Source: Leucoraja ocellata
Taxonomy: Eukaryota
Assembly (NCBI GenBank): GCA_036785375.1
Contig: JAWMAR010000026.1
Span: 7,998,001-8,062,000 of the forward strand
Direction: 5' to 3'
Length of the DNA stretch: 64,000 nucleotides
Every line of letters begins with the position of its first letter. Position 1 is the stretch's first letter. The position numbers and the translations under genes were made by a program. The notes under the pieces are model-generated. The model worked only from the letters and a program-made list of their open reading frames with translations. It was not told the DNA's origin and made no database searches. Below, piece by piece: positions 1,002 to 38,479 of the stretch.

Positions 1002-1313
1002 CGTAAACTACCAGCTTTGTACCAGTCCCGTTTAAAACTTTGGAACGGGTCAAGCTGCAGAAATAGAGCCCGGCGTCCTTCACTGTCACGTCCTCCACCC
1101 GTAAGACAGCGTTTCCCCCTCTCAGGAAATAAAACTGGATTCGTCTATCTGCACTTTCATCCAGGAATCTATTATCCCCATCTCTCCACCAATGCACTTT
1201 GTACGGCTTGTTGTCTGAGAACATTGGATAAATGCAATAAAGCACTGCCGAGTCACCCCGCATCAAAACTGCTTCTGGAACTTGTGTTACGGTCAACGGA
1301 CCATCCCCACCAG
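1002..1313 (-). CDS. Gene A exon 2: V-set Ig domain with germline-joined J-like G strand; remainder of the gene lies left of the window
   Basis: Acceptor ttcccgacag|, donor G|gtgagt, 312 bp, phase 1-1. Hallmarks LYC, HWWR, DAGLYFC, NGTGTKLVV. Confidence 0.92.
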
Positions 1314-1484
1314 CTGTCGGGAAACGAAAAATCAAACTATAAGGTTTAGGATTAAAGCGAGGTATTGACCAAATTAATTGAAAATTGCACGAAAGGAGAA
1401 AATAAATAAAGATAAAGGATCAGCAAACATATAAACTGATAATTAACTTTCGGTCGGACTGTCTATAGCAAGAGTAAAATATAC

Positions 1485-1536
1485 CGGCGCAGCTGATGTG
1501 GAGAACAATCAATTGCAGTAAGACCCGTGTCATCAT
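1485..1536 (-). CDS. Gene A exon 1: signal peptide (MMTRVLLQLIVLHISCA) of a VJ-C1 IgSF receptor
   Basis: ATG at 1536, 52-bp hydrophobic leader ending G|gtatat (phase 1). Encodes the same peptide as the gene C leader. Confidence 0.85.
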
Positions 1537-2419
1537 TCACGGCAAAACTGCAGAGAACAGTCGACTGAAACAAGTGTCGAATAAATAGTGAGCGAGGAAT
1601 ACCGCGAGTATGCCTGGGTTCAGTGGGTGTGCCGGAAAGTGAGTTTGCTCATGCTCATCTCGTGCATGAGCTGCCTCTCTGCGCATTGACGCGGATCAAA
1701 GGTGAAGTTAGTGGCTGCTCACACGTTTCCGAAAACTTCACAAAGCATTTGCTGAACAACTACAGACATTCAATGCAGCTAGAAATGGCTGCCATTGCGC
1801 TTTTGCCCATGCGATCTATTAAGCAATGTCCTCGTACTGATCGTCACGAATGTGGTGTCCACTTTGGTGTCCACGGTCGACCTTTGTGAAAATACAGTGA
1901 CGTGTCGCAGATGCGCCCTGCTTTGATTGCGCCAATACTTTCCATTCAACACGCCATGATGCTAGCAAAGTTAAGTCATCATGGAGTATCAAGTAAGTGC
2001 ATGAGTGCGTGCCTTTCTCGAAACAGTTCAGCTACCTCCTCCTCCTCTACCCCTTGCCCAGCCTTTGCTACATTTAACTGCCGTATGACATGCAAAGCGC
2101 CAGAGGTTCACATTGTTGAGTTCATTGGCAAATTGAAAGGCGAGCGGTTCACATCATGGTCAAAACTGGCAATTAATCGAGGATGTACATAAGAGAGTAT
2201 TTCTCTGTCATCGAAACAGACCTCAGATCGGCAAGATTTTGCAGTTCTGCGATGGTCCGCGTACATCCGAGCTGAGGCAGGAGTGGGATGTCGAGCATAA
2301 TTCCGCCTGGATGATAGGACCAATTTAACGCCATTCCCATTTCTCCGTGTAACAGGATTAAAAAAAAAAGATCGCTTTCGATTCGGGAAAAACGGTAGGA
2401 GTCAAAAGACCAAGAAATA

Positions 2420-2795
2420 AAACTGAAGATACACACAAAATGCTGGAATAACTCAGCGGGACAGGCAGCATCTTGAGAGAAGGAATGGGTGACGTTTCGG
2501 GTCGAGGCTGAAGAAGGGTCTCGACCTGAAACGTCACCTTTACTTCTCCCCAGAGATGCTTCCCAGCCCACTGAGTTACTCCAACATGTTGTGTCTACCT
2601 TCGATGTAAACCATTATCTGCAGTACTTTTTGACACATTTTGCGCGCTCCACTGTGAAATCTCCTCAAGGTATGTCTAGTTTGAAGAAGTAAAACTGTCT
2701 GAAGAAAGGTCTCGACCTGAGGTGTCACCCCTCCCTTCTCCCCGGAGATGCTGCTTGTCCCGCTGAGTTACGCCAGTTAATTGCATCTATCTTCC
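2420..2795. mobile_element. Penelope-derived hairpin plus an extra monomer (paralogous copy at about 39170-39505)
   Basis: gaagggtctcgacc(c/t)gaaacgtcacc...gagatgctg...ctgagttactcc motif in inverted and tandem arrangement. Confidence 0.7.
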
Positions 2796-3049
2796 GCAAA
2801 ATTTAAGCGTTAGGAACAGGGAATATGCTATCTGAACACTGAAGGCTGCCCGCCATTCAGCAAGTCCTTAATCCACCCTTGCCTCCAATTCTCCTTCTAT
2901 GCCATTTCCCCATAGCCTTCCATCCCCTGGTCTTTCACATCAAATATCGGTAATTCAATTAAATGCTTTCAATAATCTCCCATCATAACTCCATAGGGAG
3001 TTCCGTGAAAAGCAATTCCGATGCGACTCGATTTTAAATAGCTGTCCTT

Positions 3050-3432
3050 ATGTACATTCACTCATTCATTCATGCATTCATTCAATCACTCACTCACTCA
3101 ATCATNNNNNNNNNNNNNNNNNNNNNNNNNNNNNNNNNNNNNNNNNNNNNNNNNNNNNNNNNNNNNNNNNNNNNNNNNNNNNNNNNNNNNNNNNNNNNNN
3201 NNNNNNNNNNNNNNNNNNNNNNNNNNNNNNNNNNNNNATTCAGTCATTCATACATTCAAGCATTCATTCATTTATGCATTCATTCAATCACTCACTCAAT
3301 CATTCACTCACTCACTCATTCATTCCTTCAATCATTCACTCATCATATACTCATTCACTCACCCATTCACTCATCCATTCACTCATCACTCACCCATTCA
3401 CTCATTCATTCACTCACTCATTCACTCAATCA
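3050..3432. repeat. (TCAT/TCAC)n microsatellite spanning an N gap
   Basis: Direct inspection. Confidence 0.9.
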
Positions 3433-3857
3433 TGAAGTTGAGGGCCTAAACTATGTGTATCCATAACACAAGGTAAATTAAACATTTTCAGTAATGCCAG
3501 CTTGTTATAGATAATAAATCTTTAACATCTAATCTCGGAGCTGCCTGCGATAAATTACCGGGAAAAAGTGCTCCGATCGCGGGGCCTATGTATTAAAATG
3601 ATAAAGCCGCGGTCTCAATTAAGAAGCGGCCGATTCGCGATCATCTCCGCGGGCGGGCGGGCGGGCAGGCGGGGGGTGGGGGGGGGGGGGGGGGGTGGGG
3701 GGTGGAAGGCTGTACATAGTGGCTGTACACAGTGCCGGCCGTAGCGGCTGTTTCAAGGCCCCGACCACGGGAGAAAAACGGAAGAATATTTATTGCACTT
3801 TATAGGCTACCATTGCAGTGAGAAATGGCCAGAAATGGCTGATGTTTATGTAGAAAT

Positions 3858-6370
3858 TGTAGATCAGTGCATGCTCCTTTAACATAGTGACCTCACCACT
3901 ACTAACCACTCCCCATTATCTTCAGTATAACTGTAGCCTCCCCACGTCTCTCTCCCTCTCTAGCTCCAGTGACAGACCACGGACAGCTAGGGCACTGTAT
4001 GTGTTTTATACCAGTATCTATAATAAAACATGTAGTGAAGACATCACGTGTTTGGAAGTCTTTACATGGTGTCAGAAGTGGGATCACTCACTTCCTTGAG
4101 TATGCCCGTGGCCACCATGTGGCGCAGAGTCGACTTCACCCTGTCCTTCATGGCAAAGGAGACGTGGTGAGCCGGGCGGATTACCGGATCGACCTGCGGG
4201 TCCACAGCGATCTTGTAGTTGCAGGGTAACTTCCCCAACACATCACCAAAACGATCGGGGTACTCGATCATGGGGTCCATGGGGGCCTGCACCAGGTAGA
4301 TACCGCGGTGGAAGGAAACCAAACCGAGGTCCTGGCATGCACGAGCGCCCAACAGAGTTACATTCTCAGAGTCTAGCAGGAGGAAAGTGAGGGGCCGAGA
4401 GGTCTGCAGAACTGTGCAGATAAGGGTTGTTTTTCCGACTGGTGTGAGCACTCCTCCCCCATAGGCATGAAGACGGGAGTCGTTGGGAGTAACCTTCTCA
4501 CCAGATCTTATCTGCTTGAAAAGGCTCCTTGACATAACATTGGCGAAAGCTCCATGTCGACCTTCGCAGTAAAGGTCGCCCCATTCACGGTAACACGTAC
4601 AGAGGGATCCTTTATCAAAGCAGGTGCACCCAAGAGCGAAAAAATAGACGATTCATCATGTGAGGAGCCGTTATCTGAAACAAGTTCGTCTGAATGGTGC
4701 TGGGAACCAAGAGCGCTATCAGTCTCAGCAAGGTTGTTTAGGCTCCTCCGTGGAGCAGGGACCGGCCTTCCAGTGGAACGACAAGCTGCAGAAAAGTGAT
4801 TTAGCTTTCGGCAGAAATTGCAAGTTTTCCCCAGCGCGGGGCAAACATTAAACTGATGACTAGCGAAGTTGCAGTTGGGGCAACGACGCGGGCCATCCCT
4901 CGTGGGTGCGGGAGCGCTACGCTGGCGTGGCGGGCCATCGTTCCGCCTGCGCCCAGCAGCACTGGCATAGTGAACGTCCTGAGCAGCAGGTGTAGATACA
5001 GAGGCAACAGCAGCAGCCATACGAGAGGAATGCAAAGCCTCGTTTAAAGTCAGATCAGGCTTCCTTAAGAGCTCAGCCCGTACTACTGCCCACCCTCACA
5101 TCTGCTGCTATCATCGGGAAGCTGCGCCGCCACTTTGCGACCTTCGGCTCTCCAGTTACTTTGCAGTCTGACAACGGCGGCCAGTTCTCCAGTGCGGAGT
5201 TCCGCACCTTCGCTACATCCTGGAACTTTCGCCACATCACCAACAGCCCGGAGTACCCGCAGAGCAACGGCCTTGCTGAGCGCGCCGTCCGCAGTGCAAA
5301 GGAGTTGCTGGAGCATTGCAGACTTTCGCGGTCGGACTTGTACCTGGCCATCCTCAACCTCCACAATATTTCCCGTGACCCTGCCCTGGGCTCGCCTGCT
5401 CAGCAGCTCATGTCCCGCACCACACGCCCTCCGATCCCTGTCTCACAGCGATCTCTGCAGCCCGCGGTCCTCAGCCCTGCCACTGTCCAGGAGCGATTTG
5501 CCCAGAAACAGGCCATCCAGAAGCGCTCTCACGCCAGGTCCTGTCGTCCCCTTCCGCGTCTCTTCCCGAATCAGGTGGTCCGGATGCGGTCCCCCTCCGG
5601 CCACTACCGGCTAGCCGTGGTCATCGGCTCTGCGGCTCTCCTTGGTCTTACCTCATTGAGTATGAGGGTACCATCTACCGCCGGTCCCGCCAGCATCTGC
5701 TCCTGGTCACCGAGCCCGCTCCACCCCCTGCAGCCCCCTTTGGCCCTCCGGTTCCTTCCACTCTGCCCTCCGCTCCTCGCATGCCCAGGGCTCTGCCGTC
5801 TCAGCTTTGTGTGCCCCGTTCTCCCCCGGCTCCTCCCAGTCCACCTTCTCCTTCCTCGCCCGCTCCCGTGCCCACTTCTCCCGCTTCTCCTCCCCGCTTT
5901 CCTCGTCCTCCCTCTCCGGCAAGTTCTCCTGCCGTTCCCCTATCGCCGGCCCGGCTCTCGTCCCTGCGGGGGGGGGGGGGGGGGGGGGAGGGTGGGCTGT
6001 GCACCCGCTCCGGGCGGTTGGTCAAGCCGCCTGTACGTTACGGGGAGTTTGCTTGAATGTGTTAACTGTTTCTTGCCGGTGTACGCGCGGAGGGTGTTTC
6101 TAGCGTATGAGTCGTGGTCGCACTGTCACTGCTATAATACTTTGTTTTCCGAGGGGAAGGATATAGATAAGTGCATGCTCCTTTAACATAGTGACCTCAC
6201 CACTACTAACCACTCCCCATTATCTTCAGTATAACTGTAGACTCCCCACGTCTCTCTCCCTCTCTAGCTCCAGTGACAGACCACGGACAGCTAGGGCACT
6301 GTGTGTGTTTTATACCAGTATCTATAATAAAACATGTAGTGAAGACATCACGTGTTTGGAAGTCTTTACA
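3858..6370 (+). mobile_element. Defective Ty3/Gypsy LTR retrotransposon with internal inversion and deletion
   Basis: 209-bp direct LTRs (3858-4066 and 6162-6370, about 4 mismatches). PBS TGGTGTCAGAAGTGGGAT (tRNA-Leu type) at 4067. PPT at 6151-6161. Integrase core (SDNGGQF, YPQSNGLAER) on plus; gag CCHC knuckles, frameshifted protease and RT start on minus. Confidence 0.92.
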
Positions 6371-7076
6371 TAAATGAATTGGTGTATTTGAACAAACTTG
6401 AACTAATTTATCTATGGTAGTAACAGTGGTATTCTCATTAACATTAAGAAGAGGTTGAAGTGTTATGAATTGAAGTCGATGCAGACTTAATGACTATGAG
6501 ATGTTTTTTTTGGCCTCTGCTTGACCTTCCACTTGGACTTGAACTATCTTATCAATGGACTTATCAAAACTTATCAAAAGACTTGGAATCTGATGAAGAA
6601 TATTCAGATGACGATCAGATGTAATGTAAACAAATAAATTGTGGAAGTAAATGATTATATAAAGTTTTATTTTAGTGTCGATCGTTTCACTGTTTATTTG
6701 GTAAAATTATTTAAACAATGAGTGAATTACTTATGATAATGGTGTGCTGGTGAATGACAGTGCAACCGCCCACCCATCCACACATACATACACACATCCA
6801 CACACACATCCATCCNNNNNNNNNNNNNNNNNNNNNNNNNNNNNNNNNNNNNNNNNNNNNNNNNNNNNNNNNNNNNNNNNNNNNNNNNNNNNNNNNNNNN
6901 NNNNNNNNNNNNNNNNNNNNNNNNNNNNNNNNNNNNNNNNNNNNNNNNNCCACAGATACACGTTTGACAGGTATACACAGACACACACGCACAGACTACA
7001 GATACTCAAAGAATGCAACACTTTTAGGGTTATTTTAGGTTAAAGGCAATAGCCCTCATTTGCAAGTGGGGTCTTT

Positions 7077-7079
<3 letters not shown>

Positions 7080-7824: not shown

Positions 7825-9097
7825 TACTTTCCCGATTTCATTTTCAAATTAATTTAATTAATTAATGTGCAACTTTTGACACTGACGAGTTATGACTTCC
7901 TTCTCACTTATATTTCATCTAAATCTATGGGAAATTGCTTGTAGTTCGGTGACTTGAGGCACGAACCCGATTTCTAGACACATTTTTGATGCTCGGCCCA
8001 CAGCCTAATTTCCATTGGTGACGAGCTGCCACATTGAGAAGTGTCTGTCTATTCCGATTCATCGCTTTCGAATCATTAACCAAATCACAATTCACTCGTC
8101 TCTGCTGATCCCTATTCCATGTGCTCTTTTCGCCGAGCCCCAATTTTGAAAAGCCTTCGGAAGATTGAAAGTCCGAGGAAACCCCCAAAGAAGCAGCCGC
8201 CACGTGCAGACGTGCCACGATGTGCACAACAAGAATTACAAGGCAGCACGTGTTTGCTATGACATTTGATCTAACCTTCCCGTTTCGCGGCGATCCTATC
8301 CCTCTCTTTCTCTCGCTGCCCGAAACGCAAGGTTCACATTTGCTATTCAGAACTATCCAGGAATAATTACTGAATCTATAGAACTACGGAGGATAATATC
8401 CAATATATATATTTCAAAATTCTACAAATCTGTGAGTATTGAAGACCAGCCGATTGGAATTCATCAATGCTTGGGCGCATTTTCGAGGAGCATTTTCAAA
8501 ACAACTCCGACCGCAGACGCATGTGGCAAAGCATCAAGTCCATTTCCGACTACAATAAAGTTAACCCACCCCCAGACAACGCCGCCCTTCCTGACGAGCT
8601 AAACTAGTTCTATGCTCGTTTTGATCGGGACAATAAAACACCGGCCATCAAAGCTGCCCCACCCCCGAATGGACAACCCCCCCAGTCTCTCCACCTCTGC
8701 TGTACTGAGCAACGTGAATGAGCACAAAGCTGCCGGTCCCATGACATCCCGGGCGTGTGCTCAGTGCACGTGCTGGACAACTATCCCTGGTCTTCACTGA
8801 CATTTCCAATCTGTCACTGGCCCAGGGTGTCGTCTCTACTTGCCTCAAGACCTCAACCATTGTGCCAATGCCCAAACAGTCAGCTTCAGGGAGTCTCAAT
8901 GACTTTTGCCCAGTGGCACTCACCCCTGTCATCGCGAAGTGCTTTGAGCGACTGATCTTGGCTCACCTCAAATCCAGCCTCCCTCCCACACTGGACCCCT
9001 ATCAGTTTGCCTACCGGCCCAACAGGTCTACAGAGGACGCCACATCTGCGGCCCTACACTCTGCCCTGACCCACGTGGACAATAACAACATCAGGTT

Positions 9098-9329
9098 TAA
9101 GAGGGAACTGCAGATGCTGGAGAATCGAAGGTTACACAAAAAAGCTGGAGAAACTCAGCAGGTGCAGCAGCATCTATGGAGCGAAGGAAATAGGCAACGT
9201 TTCGGGCCGAAACCCTTCTTCAGACTGGGGAAGGTCTGAAGAAGGGTTTCGGCCCGAAACGTTGCCTATTTCCTTCGCTCCATAGATGCTGCTGCACCCG
9301 CTGAGTTTCTCCAGCTTTTTTGTGTAACC
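9098..9329. mobile_element. Penelope-derived palindromic element with two inverted hammerhead-like motifs, inserted in the Rex1 RT
   Basis: Long inverted repeat flanked by a 14-bp target-site duplication aacaacatcaggtt (9084-9097 and 9330-9343). Confidence 0.75.
9232..9267 (+). ncRNA. Minimal type I hammerhead ribozyme motif (Penelope type)
   Basis: AGGT-CTGAAGA-A-GGGTTTCGGCCC-GAAAC-GTT-GCCT: core boxes, helix II stem, palindromic helix III, helix I AGGU/GCCU. Confidence 0.6.
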
Positions 9330-11371: not shown

Positions 11372-11426
11372 ATGTTTATGTTTGCCGTGCTGCTGTGTCT
11401 CTCGACCCTTCATATGAGTTACACAG
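11372..11426 (+). CDS. Gene B exon 1: signal peptide (MFMFAVLLCLSTLHMSYT)
   Basis: ATG at 11372, 55-bp hydrophobic leader, donor G|gttaac, phase 1, 168-bp intron to the V exon. Confidence 0.85.
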
Positions 11427-11594
11427 GTTAACATATTTCCCTCTATTAAAGGAAAATAACAGGGAAAAGGTCAATCCGCGAAAAGTATAAGATGTACAAC
11501 TTACTTTTGGGTCGAGCTATTTCAGCTATTTGCATTTTTATCAATCCGTTCATTGTCATTTCACATGTTTAACGTTTGTTTTTAATTTTGACAG

Positions 11595-11918
11595 TTACTG
11601 AAGAGGCCTCCTCGTTCAGGGTGCGTCAGATTCCTGATGAGGTAACGAAAGTGAAAGGTGAAAATGTATCCCTATACTGTACTTTCCCGAACTTCGGTCA
11701 GAATGCACTGGTGGATGTATACTGGAAGAGAGACGGTCAAGAAGGGACGTTGAATCCCACCGCAAACAGGAGGATGACAATGCACAATGTCCTGAAGGGA
11801 TCTGCCGAATTACATCTGTTGAACGTGAGCTTCCGTGACTCCGGGATCTATTATTGCAGTGTGAGAGGCGGGAATGGAAAGATTTCCAAAAGCAATGGCA
11901 CGAGGATTATTGTACACG
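11595..11918 (+). CDS. Gene B exon 2: V-set Ig domain (VJ-type)
   Basis: Acceptor ttttgacag|, donor G|gtgagt, 324 bp. Hallmarks LYC, VYWKR, DSGIYYC, SNGTRIIV. Confidence 0.92.
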
Positions 11919-13365: not shown

Positions 13366-13647
13366 TGTCACCGACGCCTTTGAAGATAAAACAGATGAAC
13401 GCTCCTTCCCTGGCCCTAAACTGTACAACTGCTCCGTTTTTCCCGGCGGACTGTGAACTCACTTGGTATAAAGATGACCAAGAAATAACTTCTGGAATAA
13501 ATACCACTAAAATACGGAACGAAGAGGGATTATACGTTGCTTCCAGCTTCCTGTATGTAGTGGATCGCCGATCGGTTTATAGTTGCCACGTGTTTCACGT
13601 CACCCTCCTGGTTCCGACCGTTGAAACTCACAGTTTTCCTGGAATGG
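13366..13647 (+). CDS. Gene B exon 3: C1-set Ig domain
   Basis: Acceptor cgtttcag|, donor G|gtatga, 282 bp. C1 motifs LNC-TTAPFFP-x6-W, GLY, YSCHVFH. Confidence 0.92.
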
Positions 13648-18853: not shown

Positions 18854-18964
18854 GAACACGCGTTAAACTCGTCTGCTTTCTGGCGGGTGGATTTGCCATA
18901 TGCGTGCTAATTATTCCAGCGTTGGTATGTTATGTCAGGCGGTACAAATTACACAGTACTGAAG
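18854..18964 (+). CDS. Gene B exon 4: transmembrane exon (GTRVKLVCFLAGGFAICVLIIPALVCYVRRYKLHSTE)
   Basis: Acceptor ttttccctttag|, donor G|gtaaga, 111 bp, phase 1-1. Uncharged hydrophobic stretch followed by basic stop-transfer residues. Confidence 0.85.
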
Positions 18965-19583: not shown

Positions 19584-19627
19584 CACCAGAAAATATTGAG
19601 GCCAGAACCTACCATTTCGAAACACAG
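19584..19627 (+). CDS. Gene B exon 5: short cytoplasmic exon (APENIEARTYHFETQ)
   Basis: Acceptor ttctctactag|, donor CAG|gtaatt, 44 bp, phase 1 to 0. Same length and phase as gene C exon 5. Confidence 0.72.
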
Positions 19628-20263: not shown

Positions 20264-20350
20264 TATCCTTCGTATGCAGATATGAACTTCAGCGGACAGA
20301 AGAAAACTACGAAAAACAAACGCCACGAAGAACGAACAACCTATGGCCAG
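20264..20350 (+). CDS. Gene B exon 6: cytoplasmic exon (YPSYADMNFSGQKKTTKNKRHEERTTYGQ)
   Basis: Acceptor gttccctcag|, donor CAG|gtatgg, 87 bp, phase 0-0. Aligns by eye to gene C exon 6 (EERTTYGQ vs EESTVYAQ). Confidence 0.75.
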
Positions 20351-20446
20351 GTATGGTAAAAGCGGAAGTGTATTGCAAGGAAAATCCGTGTACGTCGCCC
20401 ATATGGGCGAATCAGCAGCTCATGATCTCTGATTATTTTTCGACAG

Positions 20447-20569
20447 GTCAAAGAAGTGTCAGAACATAAACTGACCTATGCAACTCTGGATCTCGCCGCT
20501 TCTCTGAAGCATTCAAGAACGGCGAAGAACAATGAAACAGAGTATGCAGGAATCAAGATTTTTCAATAG
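20447..20569 (+). CDS. Gene B exon 7: terminal coding exon with ITIM (LTYATL) and ITSM (TEYAGI)
   Basis: Acceptor tttttcgacag|, reads VKEVSEHKLTYATLDLAASLKHSRTAKNNETEYAGIKIFQ*, TAG ends at 20569. Confidence 0.85.
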   Translation, partial: VKEVSEHKLTYATLDLAASLKHSRTAKNNETEYAGIKIFQ

Positions 20570-20754
20570 CTGTGAAACCAGCTAGCGTCCATTCACTCTG
20601 AAGCGAACGATATTTCAATTACATAAACCTGATTAACATTGTGTCACAGATCGTACAGACAATCATTTACAAGACAATGCGCAGTGAGCAGGGAATTTTA
20701 ATGAGAGATGATCTACTTTGATGAATGTTACCCTTGAAAAGGGCTGTTCGGCAC

Positions 20755-20760
20755 AATAAA
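20755..20760 (+). promoter_or_regulatory. Candidate polyadenylation signal of gene B
   Basis: AATAAA about 185 bp after the stop codon. Confidence 0.55.
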
Positions 20761-21709: not shown

Positions 21710-21715
21710 TTTATT
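21710..21715 (-). promoter_or_regulatory. Candidate polyadenylation signal of gene C
   Basis: AATAAA on the minus strand about 1.1 kb after the stop, at the edge of unique-looking sequence. Confidence 0.4.
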
Positions 21716-22829: not shown

Positions 22830-22889
22830 TTAGCCGTCTACTACTGTATAAATTATCTTCTTGGTGCTTCCTGTCCAGAATAATTGAAT
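22830..22889 (-). CDS. Gene C exon 7: terminal coding exon (IQLFWTGSTKKIIYTVVDG*), completes the ITSM and adds ITIM IIYTVV
   Basis: Strong acceptor ttttctctctcgcag|. The phase-0 frame supplies the Ile of TVYAQI and a further IxYxxV motif. Confidence 0.68.
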   Translation of the reverse strand: MQLFWTGSTKKIIYTVVDG

Positions 22890-24846: not shown

Positions 24847-24936
24847 AACGACAGTCACCTTGCATAGATAATTGGTTAACATGCATTCTTCTTTGATTCG
24901 TGAGTTATTCCATTAATTGGCTCTTGTTACACTTAC

Positions 24937-25047
24937 CTGGGCATACACCGTGCTTTCTTCAACGTATCTGCATTTAGTAGATGGTTTTAGACCAGCGATG
25001 TTTAGAGTAGTATACGTTAACTTTGGATCACATTCGGATTGCATTGT
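24937..25047 (-). CDS. Gene C exon 6: ITIM (LTYTTL) and first part of ITSM (TVYAQ)
   Basis: Acceptor taactttcag|, perfect donor CAG|gtaagt, 111 bp, phase 0-0. Reads TMQSECDPKLTYTTLNIAGLKPSTKCRYVEESTVYAQ. Confidence 0.82.
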
Positions 25048-26049: not shown

Positions 26050-26632
26050 NNNNNNNNNNNNNNNNNNNNNNNNNNNNNNNNNNNNNNNNNNNNNNNNNNN
26101 NNNNNNNNNNNNNNNNNNNNNNNNNNNNNNNNNNNNNNNNNNNNNNNNNNNNNNNNNNNNNNNNNNNNNNNNNNNNNNNNNNNNNNNNNNNNNNNNNNNN
26201 NNNNNNNNNNNNNNNNNNNNNNNNNNNNNNNNNNNNNNNNNNNNNNNNNNNNNNNNNNNNNNNNNNNNNNNNNNNNNNNNNNNNNNNNNNNNNNNNNNNN
26301 NNNNNNNNNNNNNNNNNNNNNNNNNNNNNNNNNNNNNNNNNNNNNNNNNNNNNNNNNNNNNNNNNNNNNNNNNNNNNNNNNNNNNNNNNNNNNNNNNNNN
26401 NNNNNNNNNNNNNNNNNNNNNNNNNNNNNNNNNNNNNNNNNNNNNNNNNNNNNNNNNNNNNNNNNNNNNNNNNNNNNNNNNNNNNNNNNNNNNNNNNNNN
26501 NNNNNNNNNNNNNNNNNNNNNNNNNNNNNNNNNNNNNNNNNNNNNNNNNNNNNNNNNNNNNNNNNNNNNNNNNNNNNNNNNNNNNNNNNNNNNNNNNNNN
26601 NNNNNNNNNNNNNNNNNNNNNNNNNNNNNNNN
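26050..26632. other. Assembly gap (N run) within gene C intron 5
   Basis: Run of N. Confidence 0.99.
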
Positions 26633-28912
26633 TTTGTGACCATCCTTTATTCTCTCTTCTCCAATATATGTTCCTACCATCTCCCCATGTAGCAAAACCG
26701 CAAAGATCAATCAGGCGAATGTTCCCTGCACTATTTCTATCACGGGTATATTCCAATTACAGTATAATTGGGTTCTGTATAACTGGAATCACGCGGTGCA
26801 CTGGTTGTTATTGCTCCAGATGAACTATCCGAGAGCGTTACCATCACCACGGGAAATATTATGGGCTGTATCGTAGGCTCATACATGTTAACTTGCTCAT
26901 AAATGACCTCCAGTCCATCTTAAATCACATCTGGGGTGTTATTCCGTTCCGCTTGCAAATTCTCAGAAATTCAAATAGTCCATCCCTGTTGGCAATTTCA
27001 CGACCGGATAGACTAAAGGTGTTGGATGACACCACAAAATGTTTAGTCCAACCGATTACCCTGAACATCAGTGGCATTGCGGTCACTGAATCCTCCAACA
27101 TCAACTCTTTAGTACTCATCATAGATCACAAATGCACGAGGATTAGCCTCATAAATAGTAGAGCTGCAAGAGTAGGCGGTGTATCCTGCGAAAAGCTACT
27201 CCAATCACTGACTCCGAAACAGTTTCTCATCGTCGAAGCATAATTTGAGCATGTGATAGAATGACTTTCATCTGGCTAGCTGAGTGCAGTTCCAGCAAAT
27301 GTTCCAATTCCAGACAACTGACACCATGCAGGTCAAATCGGTGCATTTGGTTACCAACCCAGCTACCGTAAGCAGTTATTCCCTTCACCAGTGTACTATT
27401 TACTACGTACACTGCAGCTATTCATCCCATCCATTGCATAAGCGCAAAGCAATCTTTTGATCTCCACTCCTAGAGAACAAAGTTTGAATGGGATCACTGC
27501 CACGTGTAGGTTCCTCTCCGAGTCATACACGTTCTTTACTTAGAAATTGGTTGCCAGTCCTCCCTCCTCGTTGTGTCTAAATCCCCCAAGCTTCTACACG
27601 AAGCAATATGACAGCACCTTTATCTGAAGCACGAGAGAGATTCAAGATTATGCCCTTTAATCACCACCTGAATTTCAGTTAGTGGTGTATTATGGATTAT
27701 AGCCTCGCTTATTCACGAAAAGTAAATTAAACTAAAGCAAAGGCCCTCAATTCTGCCGTTTCTATTAGATTTCCCCCCTTTTTGAGTGTATTTTGTTAAT
27801 TGCAATTAGACAAAGCTACGAACGAAGCACTCAGTTACATCTTGAAATTCCATTCAACTGTGATTCATTCGCTGCTCCGTGAAATGGCGCATGTTGCATA
27901 TACCTGGGTATATATTGTGCTCGGTTCTGCATATTTATCTTCGGCAGATCGCTTTGCATCAGCGATACGGAAATCACTGTAAACAATTGCTTCATTGGAT
28001 TCCAAATGCTTAGTCTAAAAAACAGTATTATGTTAGAATTATTTCCTACCAATCAAAATATTTTCCATAAATTTACCACAATAGTCAAAATTAAACATCG
28101 TACATTCCAGCAGCATGCCAAATTCGGATGAAAAAAGCTATCGGAAAAGGAATGTATCGACTTGCATAGACCTTGATGACTGGTCTCCTTGAGAGGCGTG
28201 CGTTTCTTTGACTGTGACGAGATCTTCCTATGATGGGGTGAGCTCAGTGAGATTTCAACAGACTGATAGACTGTCAAGTCTAGCGTATGCATTGGGTTAA
28301 ATTGAGGTAATTTCACTAAAATTTGGACGCATGAGAAGGCAGCCAGACAATTGTTTACAAATCCACGGTATAGGAGAGATATGATGGAGTCATGTAATTT
28401 CCCATTGATGTGAAACCCAGTACCAGGAACCATTGTAAAATAATACGGGAAAAACGATTTCAAACTGTAATGGGGACAGCGTTCTTCTCCAGGAGAGAAG
28501 AAAATCTATCTCACAAATCACTCGAATCCAAATTATGACATTTATTCAAAATGATGTGAACATTGTTATAATATGAGAGAGAAGTACAGCGCGAAACAAG
28601 TCTCAGGGATCAAGGGACAATGGGAGAAAGTATTGAACGACCAAGAAAGGTCGAAGGACCATGTCGCGTATTCCTTCTCCCAATTCTACGTTTCTATCGC
28701 CATGCTTCCATTAACAAACATCAAGTACACAGATGGGCCTGCAGTAGCTGTGTTTGCATTTGAAGGCATCACTGAGGAATTTCATGTTTCATGTTGCTCC
28801 AATTTCATCACGCGTTGACTTGGAGAATTTTGTAATTATCCAAACGAAGGTAATAATTGGGAGGGTGTCCGAGTGCTGTTTGAACGTCTCTGCAGTATTA
28901 TACATGTCTTAC

Positions 28913-28956
28913 CTTCGTTGTATGCCCTGCACGTCCTTTCGATTTTCTGCACGTCC
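28913..28956 (-). CDS. Gene C exon 5: short cytoplasmic exon (GTCRKSKGRAGHTTK)
   Basis: Acceptor cctcactctag|, donor AAG|gtaaga, 44 bp, phase 1 to 0. Confidence 0.72.
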
Positions 28957-29616: not shown

Positions 29617-29715
29617 CTTTCCGTTTCACAATGAAAATAATGATTATGAGAGGTATCAATCCTGCTCCGATGCAACCAAAAATCCAGTTATGAAATGGAT
29701 TATCGGGTAATGGAA
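29617..29715 (-). CDS. Gene C exon 4: transmembrane exon (VPLPDNPFHNWIFGCIGAGLIPLIIIIFIVKRK)
   Basis: Acceptor ttgtttacag|, donor G|gtaagg, 99 bp, phase 1-1. Uncharged TM followed by KRK. Confidence 0.85.
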
Positions 29716-31256: not shown

Positions 31257-32268
31257 AACCATATAACCATATAACAATTACAGCACGGAAACAGGCCATC
31301 TCGGCCCTACAAGTCCATGCCGAACAACATTTTACCCTTAGTCCCACCTGCCTGCACTCATACCATAACCCTCCATTCCCTTCTCATCCATATGCCTATC
31401 CAATGTATTTTTAAATGATATCAACGAACCTGCCTCCACCACTTCCACTGGAAGCTCATTCCACACCGCTACCACTCTCTGAGTAAAGAAGTTCCCCCTC
31501 ATGTTACCCCTAAACGTCTGTCCCTTAATTCTGAAGGCATGTCCTCTTGTTTGAATCTTCCCTATTCTCAAAGGGAAAAGCTTGTCCACATCAACTCTGT
31601 CTATCCCTCTCATCATTTTAAAGACCTCTATCAAGTCCCCCCTTAACCTTCTGCGCTCCAGAGAATAAAGACCTAACTTATTCAACCTTTCTCTGTAACT
31701 TAGTTGTTGAAACCCAGGCAATATTCTAGTAAATCTCCTCTGTACTCTCTCTATTTTGTTGACATCCTTCCTATAATTGGGCGACCAAAATTGTACACCA
31801 TACTCCAGATTTGGTCTCACCAATGCCTTGTACAATTTTAACATTACATCCCAGCTTCTATACTCAATGCTCTGATTTATAAAGGCTAGCATACCAAAAG
31901 CTTTCTTTACCACCCTATCTATATGAGATTCCACCTTCAAGGAACTTTGCACGGTTATTCCCAGATCCCTCTGTTCAACTGTATTCTTCAATTCCCTACC
32001 ATTTACCATGTACGTCCTATTTTGATTTGTCCTCCCAAGGTGTAGCACTTCACATTTATCAGCATTAAACTCCATCTGCCATCTTTCAGCCCATTCTTCC
32101 AAATGGCCTAAATTACTCTGTAGACTTTGGAAATCCTCTTCGTTATCCACAACACCCCCTATCTTGGTATTATCTGCATACTTACTAATCCAATTTACCA
32201 ACCCTTCATCCAGATCATTGATGTACATGACAAACAACGAAGGACCCAACACAGATCCTGAGGCACCC
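31257..32268 (-). mobile_element. CR1 LINE 3' portion nested inside a Penelope hairpin (gene C intron 3)
   Basis: Open RT C-terminus (SVLGPSLF, KYADN, RPNLEYGVQFWSP) with an (ATATGGTT)n tail. Hairpin halves at about 31222-31260 and 32269-32415. Confidence 0.88.
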
Positions 32269-33559
32269 CAGCGGAACAGGCAGCATCTCTGGAGAGAAGG
32301 AATGGATGACGTTTCGGGTCGGGATGAAGAAAGGTCTCGACCCGAAACGTCACCCATTCCTTCGCTCCGGAGACGCTGTCTTTCCCGCTGAGTTACTCCA
32401 GCTTTTTGTCTATCTTTAATTTTATAACTTGGTTGTTAGATTTTCTCCATTATATACAAGAGTTTCCAATGTACAAGCAATGCCCATTATTCGGGCAGGA
32501 AACAGCGTGTCCTCAAAATATTCGCAAAAATTCTGTCATTGATTTTCTAAAGCAGTTATTTTTCTTAATTTTGCCAATGGTAGATCAGGCCAAGATATAC
32601 GTCTCCCCCCCCCCCCCCCCCCACCGATGTTGAGCGTCTACTACTCTCAACAGTCAACGAATGTCGTGAAATGCTCCCCACCTATTGGCACAAGGGACTT
32701 CTTAACATCTTGTCCTGTGTACTTGATTCAGGTCACCATGACAAAATAAATGTTCAAATGTCTCAGAGAATCTATTAAATTGAAACCATTTGATGGATTC
32801 GTTTACGCGTGGGCGGAACCTGCCATCTTTTTGCAAAGTACATTGGAATTCATTGCAAATTGAATTCTAACAAATAGTGTCAGTGATCTTGGAATTGCGG
32901 ACCATCATTCATTTTAAAATGTCAATTATAACCAATGCTGCGAAATCTGCATGCTTGGGATTAAGGCTCGATGTAAAAAGTAAAATATGGAGAGGATAAA
33001 GGATCAAGAATAATGGCAATTAAGAGAAGGACACACAGCAGTACTTCGTGAAATGGTGTCATCCACCGCCCCCTTTACCTCGACAGGTTTAAAAATCCTT
33101 CAACAGGCATGAGTGAATCACTTGTAAAGTTTAAAGAATCTCGCTGGGTGCTGATCGGCTTGATCGCATGGGGAGAATAAATTCCAGTGCAAATCTGGAG
33201 GAATCCATTGGAAGGGTAAATTACAGACCGGGTGAATCCAACGTAATATGGCAGGAGGTTATTTGCACCATAGGCGAGGCCATATGAAGAATGTATAAGT
33301 ACGTGATGTATGGCGGGGAAGGAAGCGCGCAGTTTCAACAAAGCAAGCTCTTGCAAATTACAATGCGATCATTTCTGTTTTCGTAGTTGTCTTGGCTAAT
33401 CAATAATTATTGTCTATCCATTAAGATATGCTGGAAAATCTTGGAGTTTTAACTGTAGATTCCATTGTAGACGGCTAAGGGAAATATACAAGGCTGGTTG
33501 GGAAGCATAGTAACATGGGGAATGGTTCGTCAGTGAAAGGGAATTTATTGAAGAGTATA

Positions 33560-35213: not shown

Positions 35214-35516
35214 CTCGACTGTAGAAAGTATAACTGATATTGGTTGGATTCGGAAGAGAAATATGAGACACCTGGCAGGTATAAACTGTCCCGCTCTCCA
35301 CATCGTCTGTCTCGGTCAGGCAGCTCCAAGCTTCGTACAGTCCTGCTGATGTCTGCGTTTTGTTTGGCTCAATCTTCTGTATAATATCTGACCCATTTTT
35401 GTACCAGGTAATATTCAGATCAAGAGGAAAGAACGTTGCTGTTTTACAAACGAGAATCAGAGTAACCGATGTGTTCTCCGGCAGCATGGTGGTCAAGCTC
35501 AGAGGAGTTGGGGGGT
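35214..35516 (-). CDS. Gene C exon 3: C1-set Ig domain
   Basis: Acceptor ttttattttccag|, donor G|gtaaga, 303 bp. LVCKTATFFPLDLNITW, GLY, YTCQVSH. Confidence 0.92.
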
Positions 35517-36572: not shown

Positions 36573-36600
36573 GACGTTTCGGGTCGAGACCCTTCTTCAG
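36573..36600 (-). ncRNA. Minimal hammerhead ribozyme core (Penelope type)
   Basis: Minus strand reads CTGAAGA-A-GGGTCTCGACCC-GAAAC-GTC. Helix I is imperfect. Confidence 0.5.
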
Positions 36601-37583
36601 ACTAAATGTAACAATACAGATCTTTATCCCTCAATGACTGACTCGCTTCACGGCTCCTATATAATTTCAAATGGCATCCGGAACAATCAGAAATGTGACC
36701 AAACTTATACTACGGATCAACATGGTACCAATTGAGCAAGTGCAAAGGAAGTTCACCAGAATGTTGACTGAAATAGAGGGGCTAGTTATAACGAGACACA
36801 GATGATGAATAAAAAATGAGACATTTGGTGAACTTGGTTTATTCTCAGTAGAACATAGGAGGCAGAAGAGTAACCTTGTAAAAGGTTATTTTTTTAAATA
36901 TCGGGGCCACACAGACGGAGTCCCCCCCCCTGCGTGGAATCACGCACTGTGAGGCACGGTTTTTAGGTAAAAGTGGAAAATGTAAACGAGGAAGGTTTGC
37001 ACACTTGGAACATCTGCCACAGAAGAGGGTGCAGTACAATAATAACATTTAAATCGCGTTAGACTGGTAATTACTGAGAAGCGTTATAGAGGGATATGGT
37101 CCTAATGCAGGCAAACGCCATCAACATATATAAGTAGCACGGTCGGCAGAGACGACGTGGGCAGAACGGGCCAGTTGTTGTGTTGTATGATTCTATAATT
37201 CTGTAATTCCTTACAATTTAGATAAAAAAAATATGACAGGTCCAAAGAAATCAATTAAAAAATCTCCTTGATCAGTACCACACTCGGAACCCTGCATACT
37301 TTCACTCTCAACTACCTGTATCGTGTGTTGTTGGTTTCAGTAACAACCTTCCCTCGGCGTTGAAGCAATTCTAAACTATACGCGAAAGGTGTTTTAATTC
37401 TGTCAAGCAGAAGGTGTGGAAGGCATCATTTACTCTCTCAATAAGTCTATTCGGATTCGTTGGTAATTGCGTCAAAAATACTATCTAACCCATCACAAAA
37501 ATCATATTATTTCAAAGCACACAGATGATGTAGAAAGCGCAATTTCTTTAACTTGATTGAGCTAATCGCTTTTAGTTGGTGAA

Positions 37584-37902
37584 TAGACAGTAGACAGTAT
37601 GTGCAGGAGTTAGCCATTCGGCCATTTGAGCCAGCACCGCCATTCAATGTGATCACGGCTGATCATCTCCAATCAGTACCTCGTTTCTGCCTTCTCCCCA
37701 TATCCCCTGACTGCTATCTTTAAGAGCCATATCTTGCTCTCTCTTGAAAGCATCCAGAGGACCGGCCTCCACCACCCTCTGAGGCAGAGAATTCCACAGA
37801 CTCACAACTCTCTGTGTGAAAAAGTATTTCTTCGTCTCCGTTCTAAATGGCTTACTCTTTATTCTTAAACTGTGGTCCCTGGTTCTGTTTTCCTCCAACA
37901 GT
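37584..37902 (-). mobile_element. Short CR1 3' end inserted just downstream of the gene C V exon
   Basis: FFTQRVVSLWNSLP plus CR1 3' UTR. Absent at the paralogous site (about 960). Confidence 0.88.
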
Positions 37903-37944
37903 TGAAGTTAACCGATCTGGCTCACTCCTCTCCCCGAAACTCAC

Positions 37945-38256
37945 CGTAAACTACCAGCTTTGTACCAGTCCCGTTTAAAACTTTGGAACGTGTCAAGCTG
38001 CAGAAATAGAGCCCGGCGTCCTTCACTGTCACGTCCTCCACCCGTAAAACAGCGCTTCCCCCTCTCAGGAAATAAAACTGGATTCGTCTATCTGCACTTT
38101 CATCCAGGAATCTATTATCCCCATCTCTCCACCAATGCACTGTGTACAGCTTGTTGTCTGAGAAGATTGGATAAATGCAGTAAAGCACTGCCGAGTCACC
38201 CCGCATCAAAACTGCTTCTGGAACTTGTGTTACGGTCAACGGACCATCGCCACCAG
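37945..38256 (-). CDS. Gene C exon 2: V-set Ig domain (VJ-type)
   Basis: 312 bp, canonical AG/GT. 8 nt differences from the gene A V exon by manual count. DAGLYFC and NGTGTKLVV present. Confidence 0.92.
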
Positions 38257-38427
38257 CTGTCGGGAAACGAAAAATCAAACTATAAGGTTTAGGATTAAAG
38301 CGAGGTATTGACCAAATTAATTGAAAATTGCACGAAAGGAGAAAATAAATAAAGATAAAGGATCAGCAAACATATAAATTGATAATTAACTTTCGGTCGG
38401 ACTGTCTATAGCAAGAGTAAAATATAC

Positions 38428-38479
38428 CGGCGCAGCTGATGTGAAGAACAATCAATTGCAGTAAGACACGTGTCATCAT
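38428..38479 (-). CDS. Gene C exon 1: signal peptide (MMTRVLLQLIVLHISCA)
   Basis: ATG at 38479, 52 bp, donor G|gtatat. Two synonymous differences from the gene A leader. Confidence 0.85.

What the first reader, a model, noticed from the sequence alone, without database searches (positions are those of the whole stretch)
1002..38479. Cluster of non-rearranging VJ-C1 inhibitory immune receptors with antigen-receptor-like ectodomains
Seen in sequence: two complete 7-exon genes (B plus, C minus) and part of a third (A). B and C have leader / V / C1 / TM / 44-bp exon / two tyrosine-motif exons, with matching intron phases. The V exon already includes the J-like G strand (NGTGTKLVV; SNGTRIIV), and I found no RSS beside it. 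Established: C1-set domains are largely confined to Ig, TCR, MHC, tapasin and SIRP-type proteins; one V plus one C1 is the layout of a TCR or Ig light chain; canonical SIRPs are V-C1-C1 and NKp30 is V only. Inference: this is an expanded family of germline-encoded, single-C1, ITIM/ITSM receptors in a cartilaginous fish. It could be a little-described checkpoint or 'self' receptor system relevant to the origin of rearranging receptors. I cannot confirm novelty without a search.
Basis: partly seen in the sequence, partly recalled or inferred. Interest (0 to 1): 0.9.

Follow-up and report, generated by a model that had tools for sequence, protein, structure and literature searches.

The report
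Skate VJ-C1 inhibitory receptor gene cluster
Three neighbouring genes in a skate-like genome encode cell-surface receptors that look like an unrearranged antibody light chain joined to an inhibitory signalling tail; they belong to a large shark, ray and chimaera family that databases name only automatically.

Summary
The core observation holds. Gene B (+, 11372-20569) is an intact 7-exon gene: leader / V with a germline J-like strand / one C1-set domain / TM / 44-bp exon / two tyrosine-motif exons. All its splice sites are AG/GT and the phases are 1,1,1,1,0,0. Gene C (-) has the same first six exons. Gene A has leader and V only. No RSS lies near any V exon and the window holds no second C1 exon.

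A better cassette exon (24937-25047) lies beyond the N gap at 26050-26632, so C's 3' end and its only canonical ITIM are unproven.

Four RNA runs gave zero depth on the tail exons laid, so no transcript evidence exists.

The genes are not unique to this genome. They belong to a multigene family found in sharks, rays, skates and chimaera. RefSeq names its members inconsistently (SIRP-alpha-like, tapasin-related-like, Ig lambda-like).

B and A/C are separate orthogroups, each holding both sharks and rays.

The ectodomain scores about equally against SIRP-alpha d1-d2 and Ig light chains.

Ten literature searches found no description, but four key papers were not held.

First-stage notes of this scan flag further members in neighbouring windows and on another piece.

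The parts
1485..1536 (-). Gene A leader exon (52 nt, phase 1)
   Evidence: Translation identical to C's leader in tblastn; 2 of 52 nt differ from C; GT donor seen.
1002..1313 (-). Gene A V exon with germline J-like strand (NGTGTKLVV). The rest of gene A lies off the window's left end.
   Evidence: ORF; 96% aa identity to C's V exon; 8 of 312 nt differ from C, 4 synonymous and 4 not; family HMM E 2e-32.
11372..11426 (+). Gene B leader exon (55 nt, ends phase 1)
   Evidence: aligns to residues 1-18 of the Mobula hypostoma model P0163.
11595..11918 (+). Gene B V exon including the J-like strand (SNGTRIIVH); AG acceptor, GTGAGT donor, phase 1/1
   Evidence: Pfam V-set E 1.5e-13; 61/105 identical to P0163 residues 21-125; no RSS.
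13366..13647 (+). Gene B C1-set exon (phase 1/1)
   Evidence: Pfam C1-set E 6.2e-12; 50/85 identical to P0163 residues 128-212.
18854..18964 (+). Gene B transmembrane exon (no charged residue in the hydrophobic core; phase 1/1)
   Evidence: Hydropathy scan; aligns to P0163 residues 220-255.
19584..19627 (+). Gene B 44-bp exon (shifts phase 1 to 0)
   Evidence: aligns to P0163 residues 258-270, 5/13 identical, a weak match.
20264..20350 (+). Gene B tyrosine exon 1 (PSYADM ... TTYGQ|; the ITSM is completed by V of the next exon)
   Evidence: family HMM E 8.9e-6; aligns to P0163 residues 280-303.
20447..20569 (+). Gene B tyrosine exon 2 with stop (LTYATL ITIM, TEYAGI ITSM). AATAAA lies 186 nt after the stop.
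   Evidence: family HMM E 8.3e-7; 21/34 identical to P0163 residues 311-345; polyA signal.
38428..38479 (-). Gene C leader exon
37945..38256 (-). Gene C V exon with J-like strand NGTGTKLVV
   Evidence: Pfam V-set E 2.6e-8; 55-56 of 101-102 identical to shark and ray orthologues P0124, P0176 and P0132.
35214..35516 (-). Gene C C1-set exon
   Evidence: Pfam C1-set E 1.2e-12; 99% identical to Leucoraja erinacea P0184.
29617..29715 (-). Gene C transmembrane exon
   Evidence: aligns to P0124 residues 233-254.
28913..28956 (-). Gene C 44-bp exon
   Evidence: aligns to P0132 residues 224-235, 6/12 identical, a weak match.
27904..28014 (-). Gene C tyrosine exon 1 (IVYSDF is non-canonical; TIYTQ| is an ITSM only if V or I follows)
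   Evidence: family HMM E 0.038, a weak match.
24913..25047 (-). Probable gene C tyrosine exon 2 beyond the N gap (LTYTTL ITIM; TVYAQ followed by a GTAAGT donor at 24936, or read-through VSVTRAN-stop ending at 24913)
   Evidence: tblastn E 1.8e-4 and 4e-4; sequence; family HMM E 5.8e-5 on the same profile positions as B's exon 7; 22/37 identical to the Mobula birostris orthologue P0132. Linkage to C across the gap is unproven.
26856..26915 (-).
   Evidence: Length deduced; its peptide has no ITIM/ITSM and no family similarity.
26050..26632 (.). Assembly gap inside or just 3' of gene C
   Evidence: Not filled and not looked up.

Best explanation
The window holds three members (A partial, B complete, C complete at least through exon 6) of a Chondrichthyes-wide multigene family of type I membrane receptors. 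Each ectodomain is one germline-joined VJ-type V domain followed by one C1-set domain. B belongs to one elasmobranch orthogroup; A and C are recent duplicates within another.

Shown: exon structure, domain types, absence of RSS, family membership and motif content.

Inferred mechanism: the V domain binds an unknown ligand. Src-family kinases then phosphorylate the tail tyrosines. In B these are one ITIM, two ITSMs and one YxxM; in C, one ITIM if the exon beyond the gap belongs to it. The phosphotyrosines recruit SH2 phosphatases (SHP-1/SHP-2) and dampen activation of the cell, as SIRP-alpha and other ITIM receptors do. Family members with short tails in other species suggest a paired inhibitory/non-inhibitory system. 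Whether the family is orthologous to tetrapod SIRPs is left open.
For: Exon models and phases. Pfam V-set and C1-set above the gathering score. No RSS. Only one C1 exon per gene. B's seven exon peptides align colinearly with the Mobula hypostoma RefSeq model P0163 (residues 1-18, 21-125, 128-212, 220-255, 258-270, 280-303, 311-345). Family breadth: 40 of 40 hits and 46 of 48 hits are chondrichthyan; 27 of 30 looked-up clusters are chondrichthyan. V tree: the B clade has 22 rows (SH-aLRT 99) and the A/C clade has 6 rows (99), each with sharks and rays. The C1 tree gives the same partners (supports 90-94). The family tail consensus has alternating YAxL and T/E-YAx motifs. SIRP-alpha d1-d2 scores 63.9 bits in one envelope. 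Protein-language-model neighbours are SIRP-alpha clusters at 0.96 (a lead only).
Against: No RNA support. In 4 of 4 RNA runs, depth on B's last three exons and on C's exon 24937-25047 was 0, apart from single-read traces of 0.1 and 0.05 in X10. Tissues are unknown and only 5-25% of each run was read. C's canonical ITIM lies beyond an assembly gap. C's exon-6 motifs are non-canonical. No binding, phosphatase recruitment or ligand was tested. The homologue models are automatic predictions. The V domain alone is closer to NKp30, TCR and VNAR V domains than to SIRP V among solved structures.
Confidence: 0.7

Rival explanations
1. The genes are simply the cartilaginous-fish orthologues of the SIRP family, that is, members of an already characterised family that lost or never gained the second C1 domain.
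For: RefSeq's automatic name for many members is 'tyrosine-protein phosphatase non-receptor type substrate 1-like'. The family profile aligns SIRP-alpha d1-d2 in one 63.9-bit envelope and d3 at 41.7 bits. Atlas neighbours are SIRP-alpha clusters. An Amblyraja model has V-C1-C1. The tail has four tyrosines; the likeness to SIRP-alpha's tail is recalled, not tested.
Against: Lambda (65.4 bits) and kappa (62.9 bits) light chains score the same as SIRP-alpha. No SIRP V domain appears among the 60 best solved chains shown for either V exon, while NKp30 does. The same family also gets the names tapasin-related, Ig lambda, NCR3LG1 and CD276, so the naming is unstable. The two C1 domains of the Amblyraja model are near-identical, so they reflect a recent duplication or an assembly artefact, not an old d2/d3 pair. 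No synteny was available.
Confidence: 0.25
2. The family is a surviving relative of the non-rearranging VJ-C1-TM precursor of antigen receptors, a sister of UrIg/UrIg2 or of light-chain/TCR-type chains. Its chains pair through their C1 domains as homo- or heterodimers.
For: One V with a J-like strand, one C1 and a TM region is the layout of a TCR chain. The family aligns colinearly with light chains through V, J and C. UrIg2 V-C1 scores 55.4 bits. UrIg and UrIg2 show that such relics survive in elasmobranchs (PMC12227049, sections 7 and 13 read).
Against: UrIg2 scores lower than SIRP-alpha and light chains. No stalk cysteine is evident between C1 and TM in B or C (by eye, 11 peptides). Linkage to the MHC or the antigen-receptor complex was not examined.
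Confidence: 0.1
3. In this genome the genes, at least C, are silent or decaying copies rather than working receptors.
For: Zero RNA depth in four runs. C's tail is interrupted by a gap. C's exon 6 has degenerate motifs. The introns are full of LINE reverse-transcriptase fragments.
Against: All 7 B exons and 6 to 7 C exons are open, with intact AG/GT sites and conserved phases. B and C are each 50-60% identical to orthologues across the shark/ray split, which implies long purifying selection. Immune receptors are often absent from non-immune tissue libraries.
Confidence: 0.12
4. The genes are NKp30 (NCR3) co-orthologues that acquired a C1 exon and an inhibitory tail.
For: NKp30 is the best solved single-V chain aligned end to end for both V exons (E 6.3e-5 for B, 4.1e-4 for C). 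One V-only isoform in Pristis is auto-named NCR3-like.
Against: The E-values are weak and close to those of TCR and VNAR V domains. The architecture differs in C1 and in the ITIM tail. NKp30 is described as a VJ single-exon MHC gene in elasmobranchs (PMC12227049 section 7) and is treated there as separate from VJ-C1 genes.
Confidence: 0.08

Closest known systems
SIRP family (SIRP-alpha / SHPS-1, PTPNS1)
   Same: Type I receptor. The N-terminal V domain has a J-like GxGT-L-V strand and is followed directly by a C1-set domain. The tail carries several tyrosine motifs. The family forms a multigene cluster holding ITIM-bearing and tail-less members. The family profile aligns SIRP-alpha d1-d2 at 63.9 bits. 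RefSeq auto-names many members SIRP-alpha-like.
   Different: One C1 here against two in SIRPs. The V exon alone is not closest to SIRP V. Orthology, CD47 binding and SHP recruitment are untested. A 2022 review says SIRP homologues are known from mammals, birds and lizards and that their evolutionary origins are unknown (PMC9652883, passage read).
Ig light chains / TCR chains
   Same: V, J strand and one C1 in the same order; lambda scores 65.4 bits and kappa 62.9 bits against the family profile; split leader and phase-1 introns.
   Different: V and J are one germline exon with no RSS. The tail carries ITIM/ITSM motifs. No interchain cysteine is evident.
UrIg / UrIg2 (elasmobranch non-rearranging antigen-receptor-like genes)
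   Same: VJ encoded by one exon, C1-type domains, elasmobranch genes. UrIg2 V-C1 scores 55.4 bits, and UrIg2 scored E 1.3e-12 against B's C1 exon.
   Different: Nurse shark UrIg2 has nine C domains and is expressed mainly in gill and liver (PMC12227049 section 7). I found no ITIM mention in that paper's text (term search: 'inhibitory' occurs 0 times). The genes here have one C1 and a signalling tail.
NKp30 (NCR3)
   Same: Non-rearranging VJ-type V domain; best end-to-end solved V match.
   Different: From recall: NKp30 has no C1 domain, no ITIM tail and signals through a charged TM residue.
PRARP and NITR (VJ-type innate receptors of bony vertebrates)
   Same: Germline VJ domain plus a second Ig domain plus ITIM. 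Both are listed with SIRP and NKp30 among VJ-joined IgSF genes (PMC11599192, passage read).
   Different: The second domain is reported as C2 or I type and the families are reported from bony vertebrates. This is recalled from the abstract of Fu et al. 2019, which was not held. No sequences were available to compare.

Membership tests
Immunoglobulin C1-set domain | Match to Pfam PF07654 above the gathering score, with the YxCxVxH signature | tested here: met
   46.1 and 48.5 bits against a cut-off of 21. VYSCHVFH in B and VYTCQVSH in C.
VJ-type (germline-joined) V domain | V-set domain whose G strand carries the J motif (GxGT-x-L/V-x-V), encoded in the same exon | tested here: met
   GTGTKLVV in A and C is the full motif. 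NGTRIIV in B keeps only the second glycine. Both lie inside the V exon, before the GT donor.
Rearranging antigen receptors (Ig/TCR) | RSS (heptamer, 12- or 23-bp spacer, nonamer) flanking separate V and J segments | tested here: not met
   No heptamer-plus-nonamer within 300 nt of any V exon.
SIRP family | V-C1-C1 ectodomain | tested here: not met
   One C1 exon per gene. No further C1-like exon in the 64 kb. One relative (Amblyraja P0150) has two near-identical C1 domains.
SIRP family | Cytoplasmic tail with four tyrosines forming SHP-1/SHP-2 docking motifs | tested here: inconclusive
   B has PSYADM, TTYGQ|V, LTYATL and TEYAGI. Binding was not testable, and SIRP-alpha's own tail was not available for alignment.
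SIRP family | Orthology: conserved synteny or monophyly with tetrapod SIRPs | not testable with these tools
No SIRP sequences were stored for a tree.
SIRP family | CD47 binding by the V domain | not testable with these tools
   Needs an experiment.
ITIM/ITSM inhibitory receptors | (S/I/V/L)xYxx(I/V/L) and TxYxx(V/I) in the tail, and no charged residue in the TM core | tested here: met
   B: one ITIM and two ITSMs, with an uncharged TM core. C: ITIM LTYTTL only in the exon beyond the gap. The motif definitions are recalled.
UrIg / UrIg2 | VJ followed by several C domains | tested here: not met
   Single C1. UrIg2 architecture taken from PMC12227049 section 7.
NKp30 | Single V domain only | tested here: not met
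   A C1 exon follows V in B and C.
Chondrichthyan VJ-C1 family (unnamed; RefSeq 'SIRP-alpha-like' and other names) | Significant match of the V, C1 and tail exons to a profile of 18 full-length members, and placement inside its clades | tested here: met
   HMM E 1e-32 to 1e-44 for V and C1, and 8e-7 to 6e-5 for the tail cassettes. Clade supports 99 in the V tree and 90-94 in the C1 tree.

The most novel reading that the evidence does not exclude
This family, one germline VJ, one C1, a TM region and a signalling tail, present in every chondrichthyan lineage sampled, is the surviving representative of the pre-RAG VJ-C1-TM receptor lineage. Both SIRPs and the single-C1 chains of rearranging receptors would descend from that lineage, and its chains would pair through C1. 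It would then offer a second candidate, simpler than UrIg2, for the type of gene invaded by the RAG transposon, and would answer where SIRPs came from.
Probability: 0.12. Interest if true: 0.85.

Novelty: new variant of a known kind. Interest (0 to 1): 0.5.

Why it matters
Germline VJ domains joined to C1-set domains are rare outside Ig, TCR, SIRP and the recently described UrIg genes, and they are central to ideas on how antigen receptors arose.

A 2022 review states that the evolutionary origins of SIRPs are unknown and lists homologues only from mammals, birds and lizards (PMC9652883).

This family is conserved in sharks, rays, skates and chimaera. It has at least two orthogroups that predate the shark/ray split, a SIRP-like tail and a light-chain-like ectodomain. 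That makes both questions testable with ordinary phylogeny, synteny and binding assays.

For genome annotation, it shows that one family is spread over at least seven unrelated automatic names.

Tried and rejected
Searching the V exon alone with the search for homologous proteins found nothing, because that tool only sees proteins 0.55-1.75 times the query length.

The exhaustive search was run with B's V exon only. No exhaustive C1 search was possible because the cap is one job.

Absence outside Chondrichthyes is therefore not shown. The profile search is word-seeded. Its two non-chondrichthyan hits (Mytilus E 5.4e-6, Esox E 5.9e-4) are weak generic Ig matches. The nearest non-family V hits are generic Ig proteins, for example a perlecan-like protein and a Varanus CEACAM1-like protein.

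A reading frame at about 26741-26916(-) with VIYEQV and NYTVI motifs was considered as C's last exon. I set it aside because it needs a phase-1 donor, which exon 6 lacks, and because the family HMM does not match it at E<5.

A TM-like ORF at 14238-14546(-) and a VTYAVI ORF at 14530(+) inside B's intron have no Pfam or family match.

MHC linkage could not be tested. White shark MHC is on chromosome 19 (PMC10751288, legend of Fig. 2), but I could not map contig lengths to chromosome names. Earlier notes on MHC genes in this genome all lie on other pieces.

Structure prediction, and so fold search, were unavailable.

Rfam at gathering score found nothing in the window.

Literature: 10 searches found no paper describing this family.
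- Read in part: PMC12227049 (outline, sections 7 and 13, term passages); PMC10751288, PMC11599192, PMC9652883 and PMC3964593 (term passages only).
- Not held: PMC3709836, PMC10530332, PMC6761025 / 10.4049/jimmunol.1900597, and 10.4049/jimmunol.1801305. Any of these may mention such genes. Supplements were closed and may too, for example Supplementary Note XI of the elephant shark genome paper.

Whole-protein questions were asked with natural homologues (P0007, P0172, alignment A1) as proxies.

Full report
WHAT IS IN THE SEQUENCE

The window has three N runs, at 3106-3237, 6816-6949 and 26050-26632. Six-frame ORFs show three V-like and two C1-like open exons. I fixed the exon ends from the printed sequence and checked them by script.

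Gene B (+):
- Leader 11372-11426, V 11595-11918, C1 13366-13647, TM 18854-18964.
- A 44-bp exon at 19584-19627, tyrosine exon 1 at 20264-20350, and tyrosine exon 2 with the stop at 20447-20569.
- Every intron is GT...AG and the exon-end phases are 1,1,1,1,0,0.

Gene C (-):
- Leader 38428-38479, V 37945-38256, C1 35214-35516, TM 29617-29715, 44-bp exon 28913-28956, tyrosine exon 1 at 27904-28014.
- The phases are the same as in B.

Gene A (-) has its leader at 1485-1536 and its V exon at 1002-1313. The rest lies off the window.

Pfam puts both V exons in V-set (E 1.5e-13 and 2.6e-8) and both C exons in C1-set (E 6.2e-12 and 1.2e-12), all above the curated cut-offs.

The J-like strand sits inside the V exon, directly before the GT donor. 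It reads NGTGTKLVV in A and C and SNGTRIIV in B.

An RSS scan found no heptamer-spacer-nonamer near any V exon. The only heptamer inside a V exon, at 38138, lies in the codons for YTVHWW and has no nonamer.

tblastn of every exon peptide against the window, and a family HMM run against all 3144 stop-to-stop pieces, find exactly three V and two C1 exons. Neither gene hides a second C1 exon.

THE GAPS

The first two gaps lie between genes A and B, in low-complexity sequence judged from the ORF translations, and touch no exon.

The third gap matters. The only one I could find that fits is 26856-26915. Its peptide has no ITIM/ITSM and no resemblance to any family tail.

tblastn with B's and C's tail exons instead finds a 111-nt phase-0/0 exon at 24937-25047(-), with E 4e-4 and 1.8e-4:
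- It encodes LTYTTL and TVYAQ, followed by a GTAAGT donor.
- The family HMM matches it at E 5.8e-5, on the same profile positions (316-356) as B's last exon. C's exon 6 matches the preceding cassette, positions 282-317.
- It is 22/37 identical to the tail cassette of the Mobula birostris orthologue P0132, against 13/37 for exon 6.

The best model of C therefore runs across the gap and ends either by read-through (VSVTRAN-stop at 24913) or in an unidentified terminal exon. Because the gap may be a scaffold join, this link is unproven.

EXPRESSION

The look-up of sequencing runs listed three runs that hold the DNA (none on record as RNA; kind not recorded) and a set of 2026 RNA runs with the same species label. 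I laid four RNA runs from three studies on 19500-25499, a stretch chosen to hold B's last three exons, both 3' ends and C's candidate exon.
- All four runs were laid.
- Depth was 0 in every 200-nt bin from 19500 to 20699, and in 24900-25099, apart from traces of 0.1 and 0.05 in X10.
- Reads piled up only at 21300-21499 and 23900-24899. There, 82-98% of them ran on into unlike sequence and most were 95-99% alike, which is the signature of dispersed repeats.

So there is no transcript evidence. The tissues are unknown and only 5-25% of each run was read, so this is weak evidence against expression and does not refute the genes.

RELATIVES

The exhaustive HMMER search with B's V exon gave 579 hits at E<=1e-3. 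The best single-V hits are 260-450-aa proteins with V, C1, TM and tails carrying repeated YAxL and T/E-YAx motifs.

Exact look-ups of 30 clusters gave:
- 27 chondrichthyan proteins, from Scyliorhinus, Cetorhinus, Heterodontus, Mustelus, Heptranchias, Carcharodon, Chiloscyllium, Mobula, Hemitrygon, Hypanus, Pristis, Amblyraja and Callorhinchus;
- 1 unnamed ENA fragment;
- 2 unrelated generic Ig proteins, which match only the V exon at an internal domain.

Searches with the natural homologue P0007 and with an 18-member alignment A1 gave 40 of 40 and 46 of 48 chondrichthyan hits. After E 4e-45, one search's list drops to a mussel protein (5.4e-6) and a pike protein (5.9e-4).

RefSeq names the members variously: SIRP-alpha-like, SIRP-beta-1-like, tapasin-related-like, Ig lambda-1-like, NCR3LG1-like, CD276 homolog, H-2 class I-like, or uncharacterized.

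Within each species, all members for which a contig is on record report the same chromosome-size contig. This suggests one cluster, or at least one chromosome, per genome.

A Leucoraja erinacea protein (P0184) is 99% identical to C's C1 exon and 96% identical to its V exon. The window is therefore from that skate or a very close relative.

TREES

These are quick IQ-TREE runs with SH-aLRT support only, on short alignments and without an outgroup.

V tree (66 rows, 107 columns):
- B sits with Mobula (95), inside a 22-row clade (99) that also holds seven shark species.
- A, C and the Leucoraja protein sit with Mobula, Heterodontus and Heptranchias in a 6-row clade (99).

C1 tree (65 rows, 101 columns):
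- It gives the same partners: B with Mobula (92) inside a 21-row clade (90), and C with Leucoraja (91), Mobula (94) and the two sharks (91).

B and A/C are thus distinct orthogroups older than the shark/ray split, and V and C1 have evolved together.

B's seven exon peptides align in order along the Mobula hypostoma model P0163. This supports the 7-exon model independently of my splice-site reading, although P0163 is itself a prediction.

A and C are recent duplicates:
- Leader, intron 1 and V differ at 11 of 535 positions.
- The whole block from V through the promoter is 92% identical, and the flanks are only 76-83% identical.

WHAT IT RESEMBLES

Solved structures, by V exon alone. The best chain aligned end to end is NKp30 (E 6.3e-5 for B, 4.1e-4 for C). 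TCR, VNAR, light-chain and amphioxus VJ-C2 V domains score close behind it. No SIRP V domain is in the 60 rows shown.

Solved structures, by C1 exon alone. The top rows are multi-domain chains whose scores sum several domains: Ig heavy-chain constant regions (mu and other isotypes), MHC class I chimeras, and (for B's C1) UrIg2. MHC class II beta is the best single-domain match for B's C1. SIRP-gamma and SIRP-alpha appear at about 2-3e-11 for C's C1.

Solved structures, by whole-family profile, per-envelope scores:

| Target | Bits |
|---|---|
| Lambda chain | 65.4 |
| SIRP-alpha d1-d2 | 63.9 |
| Kappa chain | 62.9 |
| UrIg2 V-C1 | 55.4 |
| VH-CH1 | 49.4 |

SIRP-alpha d3 adds 41.7 bits.

The ectodomain is therefore about equally like a light chain and the first two SIRP domains.

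The ESM Atlas places the chimaera member P0172 next to SIRP-alpha clusters (0.96). That is a lead only.

One skate relative (Amblyraja P0150) has two nearly identical C1 domains in tandem. Some members lack the C1 (P0004, P0008) or have short tails.

MECHANISM (INFERRED)

B's TM core is uncharged. Its tail has PSYADM (YxxM), TTYGQ|V (an ITSM completed across a phase-0 intron), LTYATL (ITIM) and TEYAGI (ITSM).

By analogy with ITIM/ITSM receptors, ligand engagement would lead to tyrosine phosphorylation and recruitment of SHP-1/SHP-2.

C has one canonical ITIM, and only if the exon beyond the gap is its own. Nothing about ligand, dimerisation or signalling was tested.

NOVELTY

The genes are already present in public annotation of other species as unnamed automatic models.

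In ten full-text searches I found no paper that describes a chondrichthyan VJ-C1-ITIM family. The papers on UrIg2 and on the elasmobranch MHC discuss UrIg, NKp30 and PRARP as the non-rearranging VJ genes, and neither contains the term SIRP. A 2022 review says the origins of SIRPs are unknown.

Four key subscription papers and all supplements were out of reach, so prior mention cannot be excluded.

I rate this a new variant of a known kind: a SIRP-like, VJ-type inhibitory IgSF receptor with a single C1 and an NKp30-like V.

First-stage notes of this scan flag further members just upstream of this window and on another piece. These are unchecked leads and I give them no weight as evidence.

LIMITS

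Noticed in passing
window 1002-1536 versus 37945-38479 (flanks 1-3000 versus 36600-39700): The leader, intron 1 and V exon of genes A and C differ at only 11 of 535 positions (V exon 8/312, 4 synonymous and 4 not; intron 1/171). The wider block from V through the promoter is 92% identical and the outer flanks are 76-83% identical. This looks like a recent conversion tract or partial duplication.
   Followed up: partly
window 26741-26916 (-): An open frame encodes DGLEVIYEQV...NYTVIGIYP-stop, with ITIM-like motifs. It starts at an AG acceptor that fits only a phase-1 donor, such as the TM exon's. The family HMM does not match it. It could be an alternative tail or chance.
   Followed up: partly
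window 21300-21499 and 23900-24899: Heavy RNA read pile-ups on both strands in all four runs. Most reads are 95-99% alike and 82-98% of them run on into unlike sequence, so these are transcribed dispersed repeats (a LINE reverse-transcriptase-like ORF lies at 24066-24533), not exons of B or C.
   Followed up: no
window 4000-6200: A GC-rich block (GC 0.586) holds long ORFs on both strands. By eye these look like a zinc-knuckle gag and an integrase of an LTR retroelement, but Pfam gave no hit at E<=1e-3. The identity is unverified.
   Followed up: partly
window 9538-10395, 31338-32357, 41881-43200, 46553-47122: LINE-type reverse-transcriptase fragments (Pfam RVT_1, E 1e-4 to 6e-34) lie in the A-B intergenic region, in C's C1-TM intron and 3-9 kb upstream of C. 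No other gene was recognised in 38.5-64 kb.
   Followed up: partly
window 14238-14546 (-): A TM-like ORF (LVGVLCAVLIILGLSLCWKRCSK) lies on the opposite strand inside B's C1-TM intron. It has no Pfam or family match.
   Followed up: partly
P0150 (Amblyraja radiata), residues about 111-310: This skate relative has two nearly identical C1 domains in tandem, a V-C1-C1 layout like SIRP's. It is either a very recent exon duplication or an assembly or annotation artefact.
   Followed up: partly
P0019, P0165, P0072, P0024 (shark relatives): These short-tailed family members have a TM segment ending in an acidic or His pair (IVDH, IVEH, IIMD) rather than the basic residue usual in activating partners. 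They may be non-inhibitory counterparts with an unusual adaptor logic.
   Followed up: no
whole window: Rfam at gathering score found no RNA family on either strand. The hammerhead-like hairpin noted earlier at 9084-9343 is therefore not supported at that threshold.
   Followed up: partly
relatives: Within each species, all family members for which a contig is on record report the same chromosome-size contig (for example 99,651,266 bp in Heterodontus, 66,547,297 bp in Heptranchias and 18,121,395 bp in Callorhinchus). This suggests one cluster or chromosome per genome.
   Followed up: no
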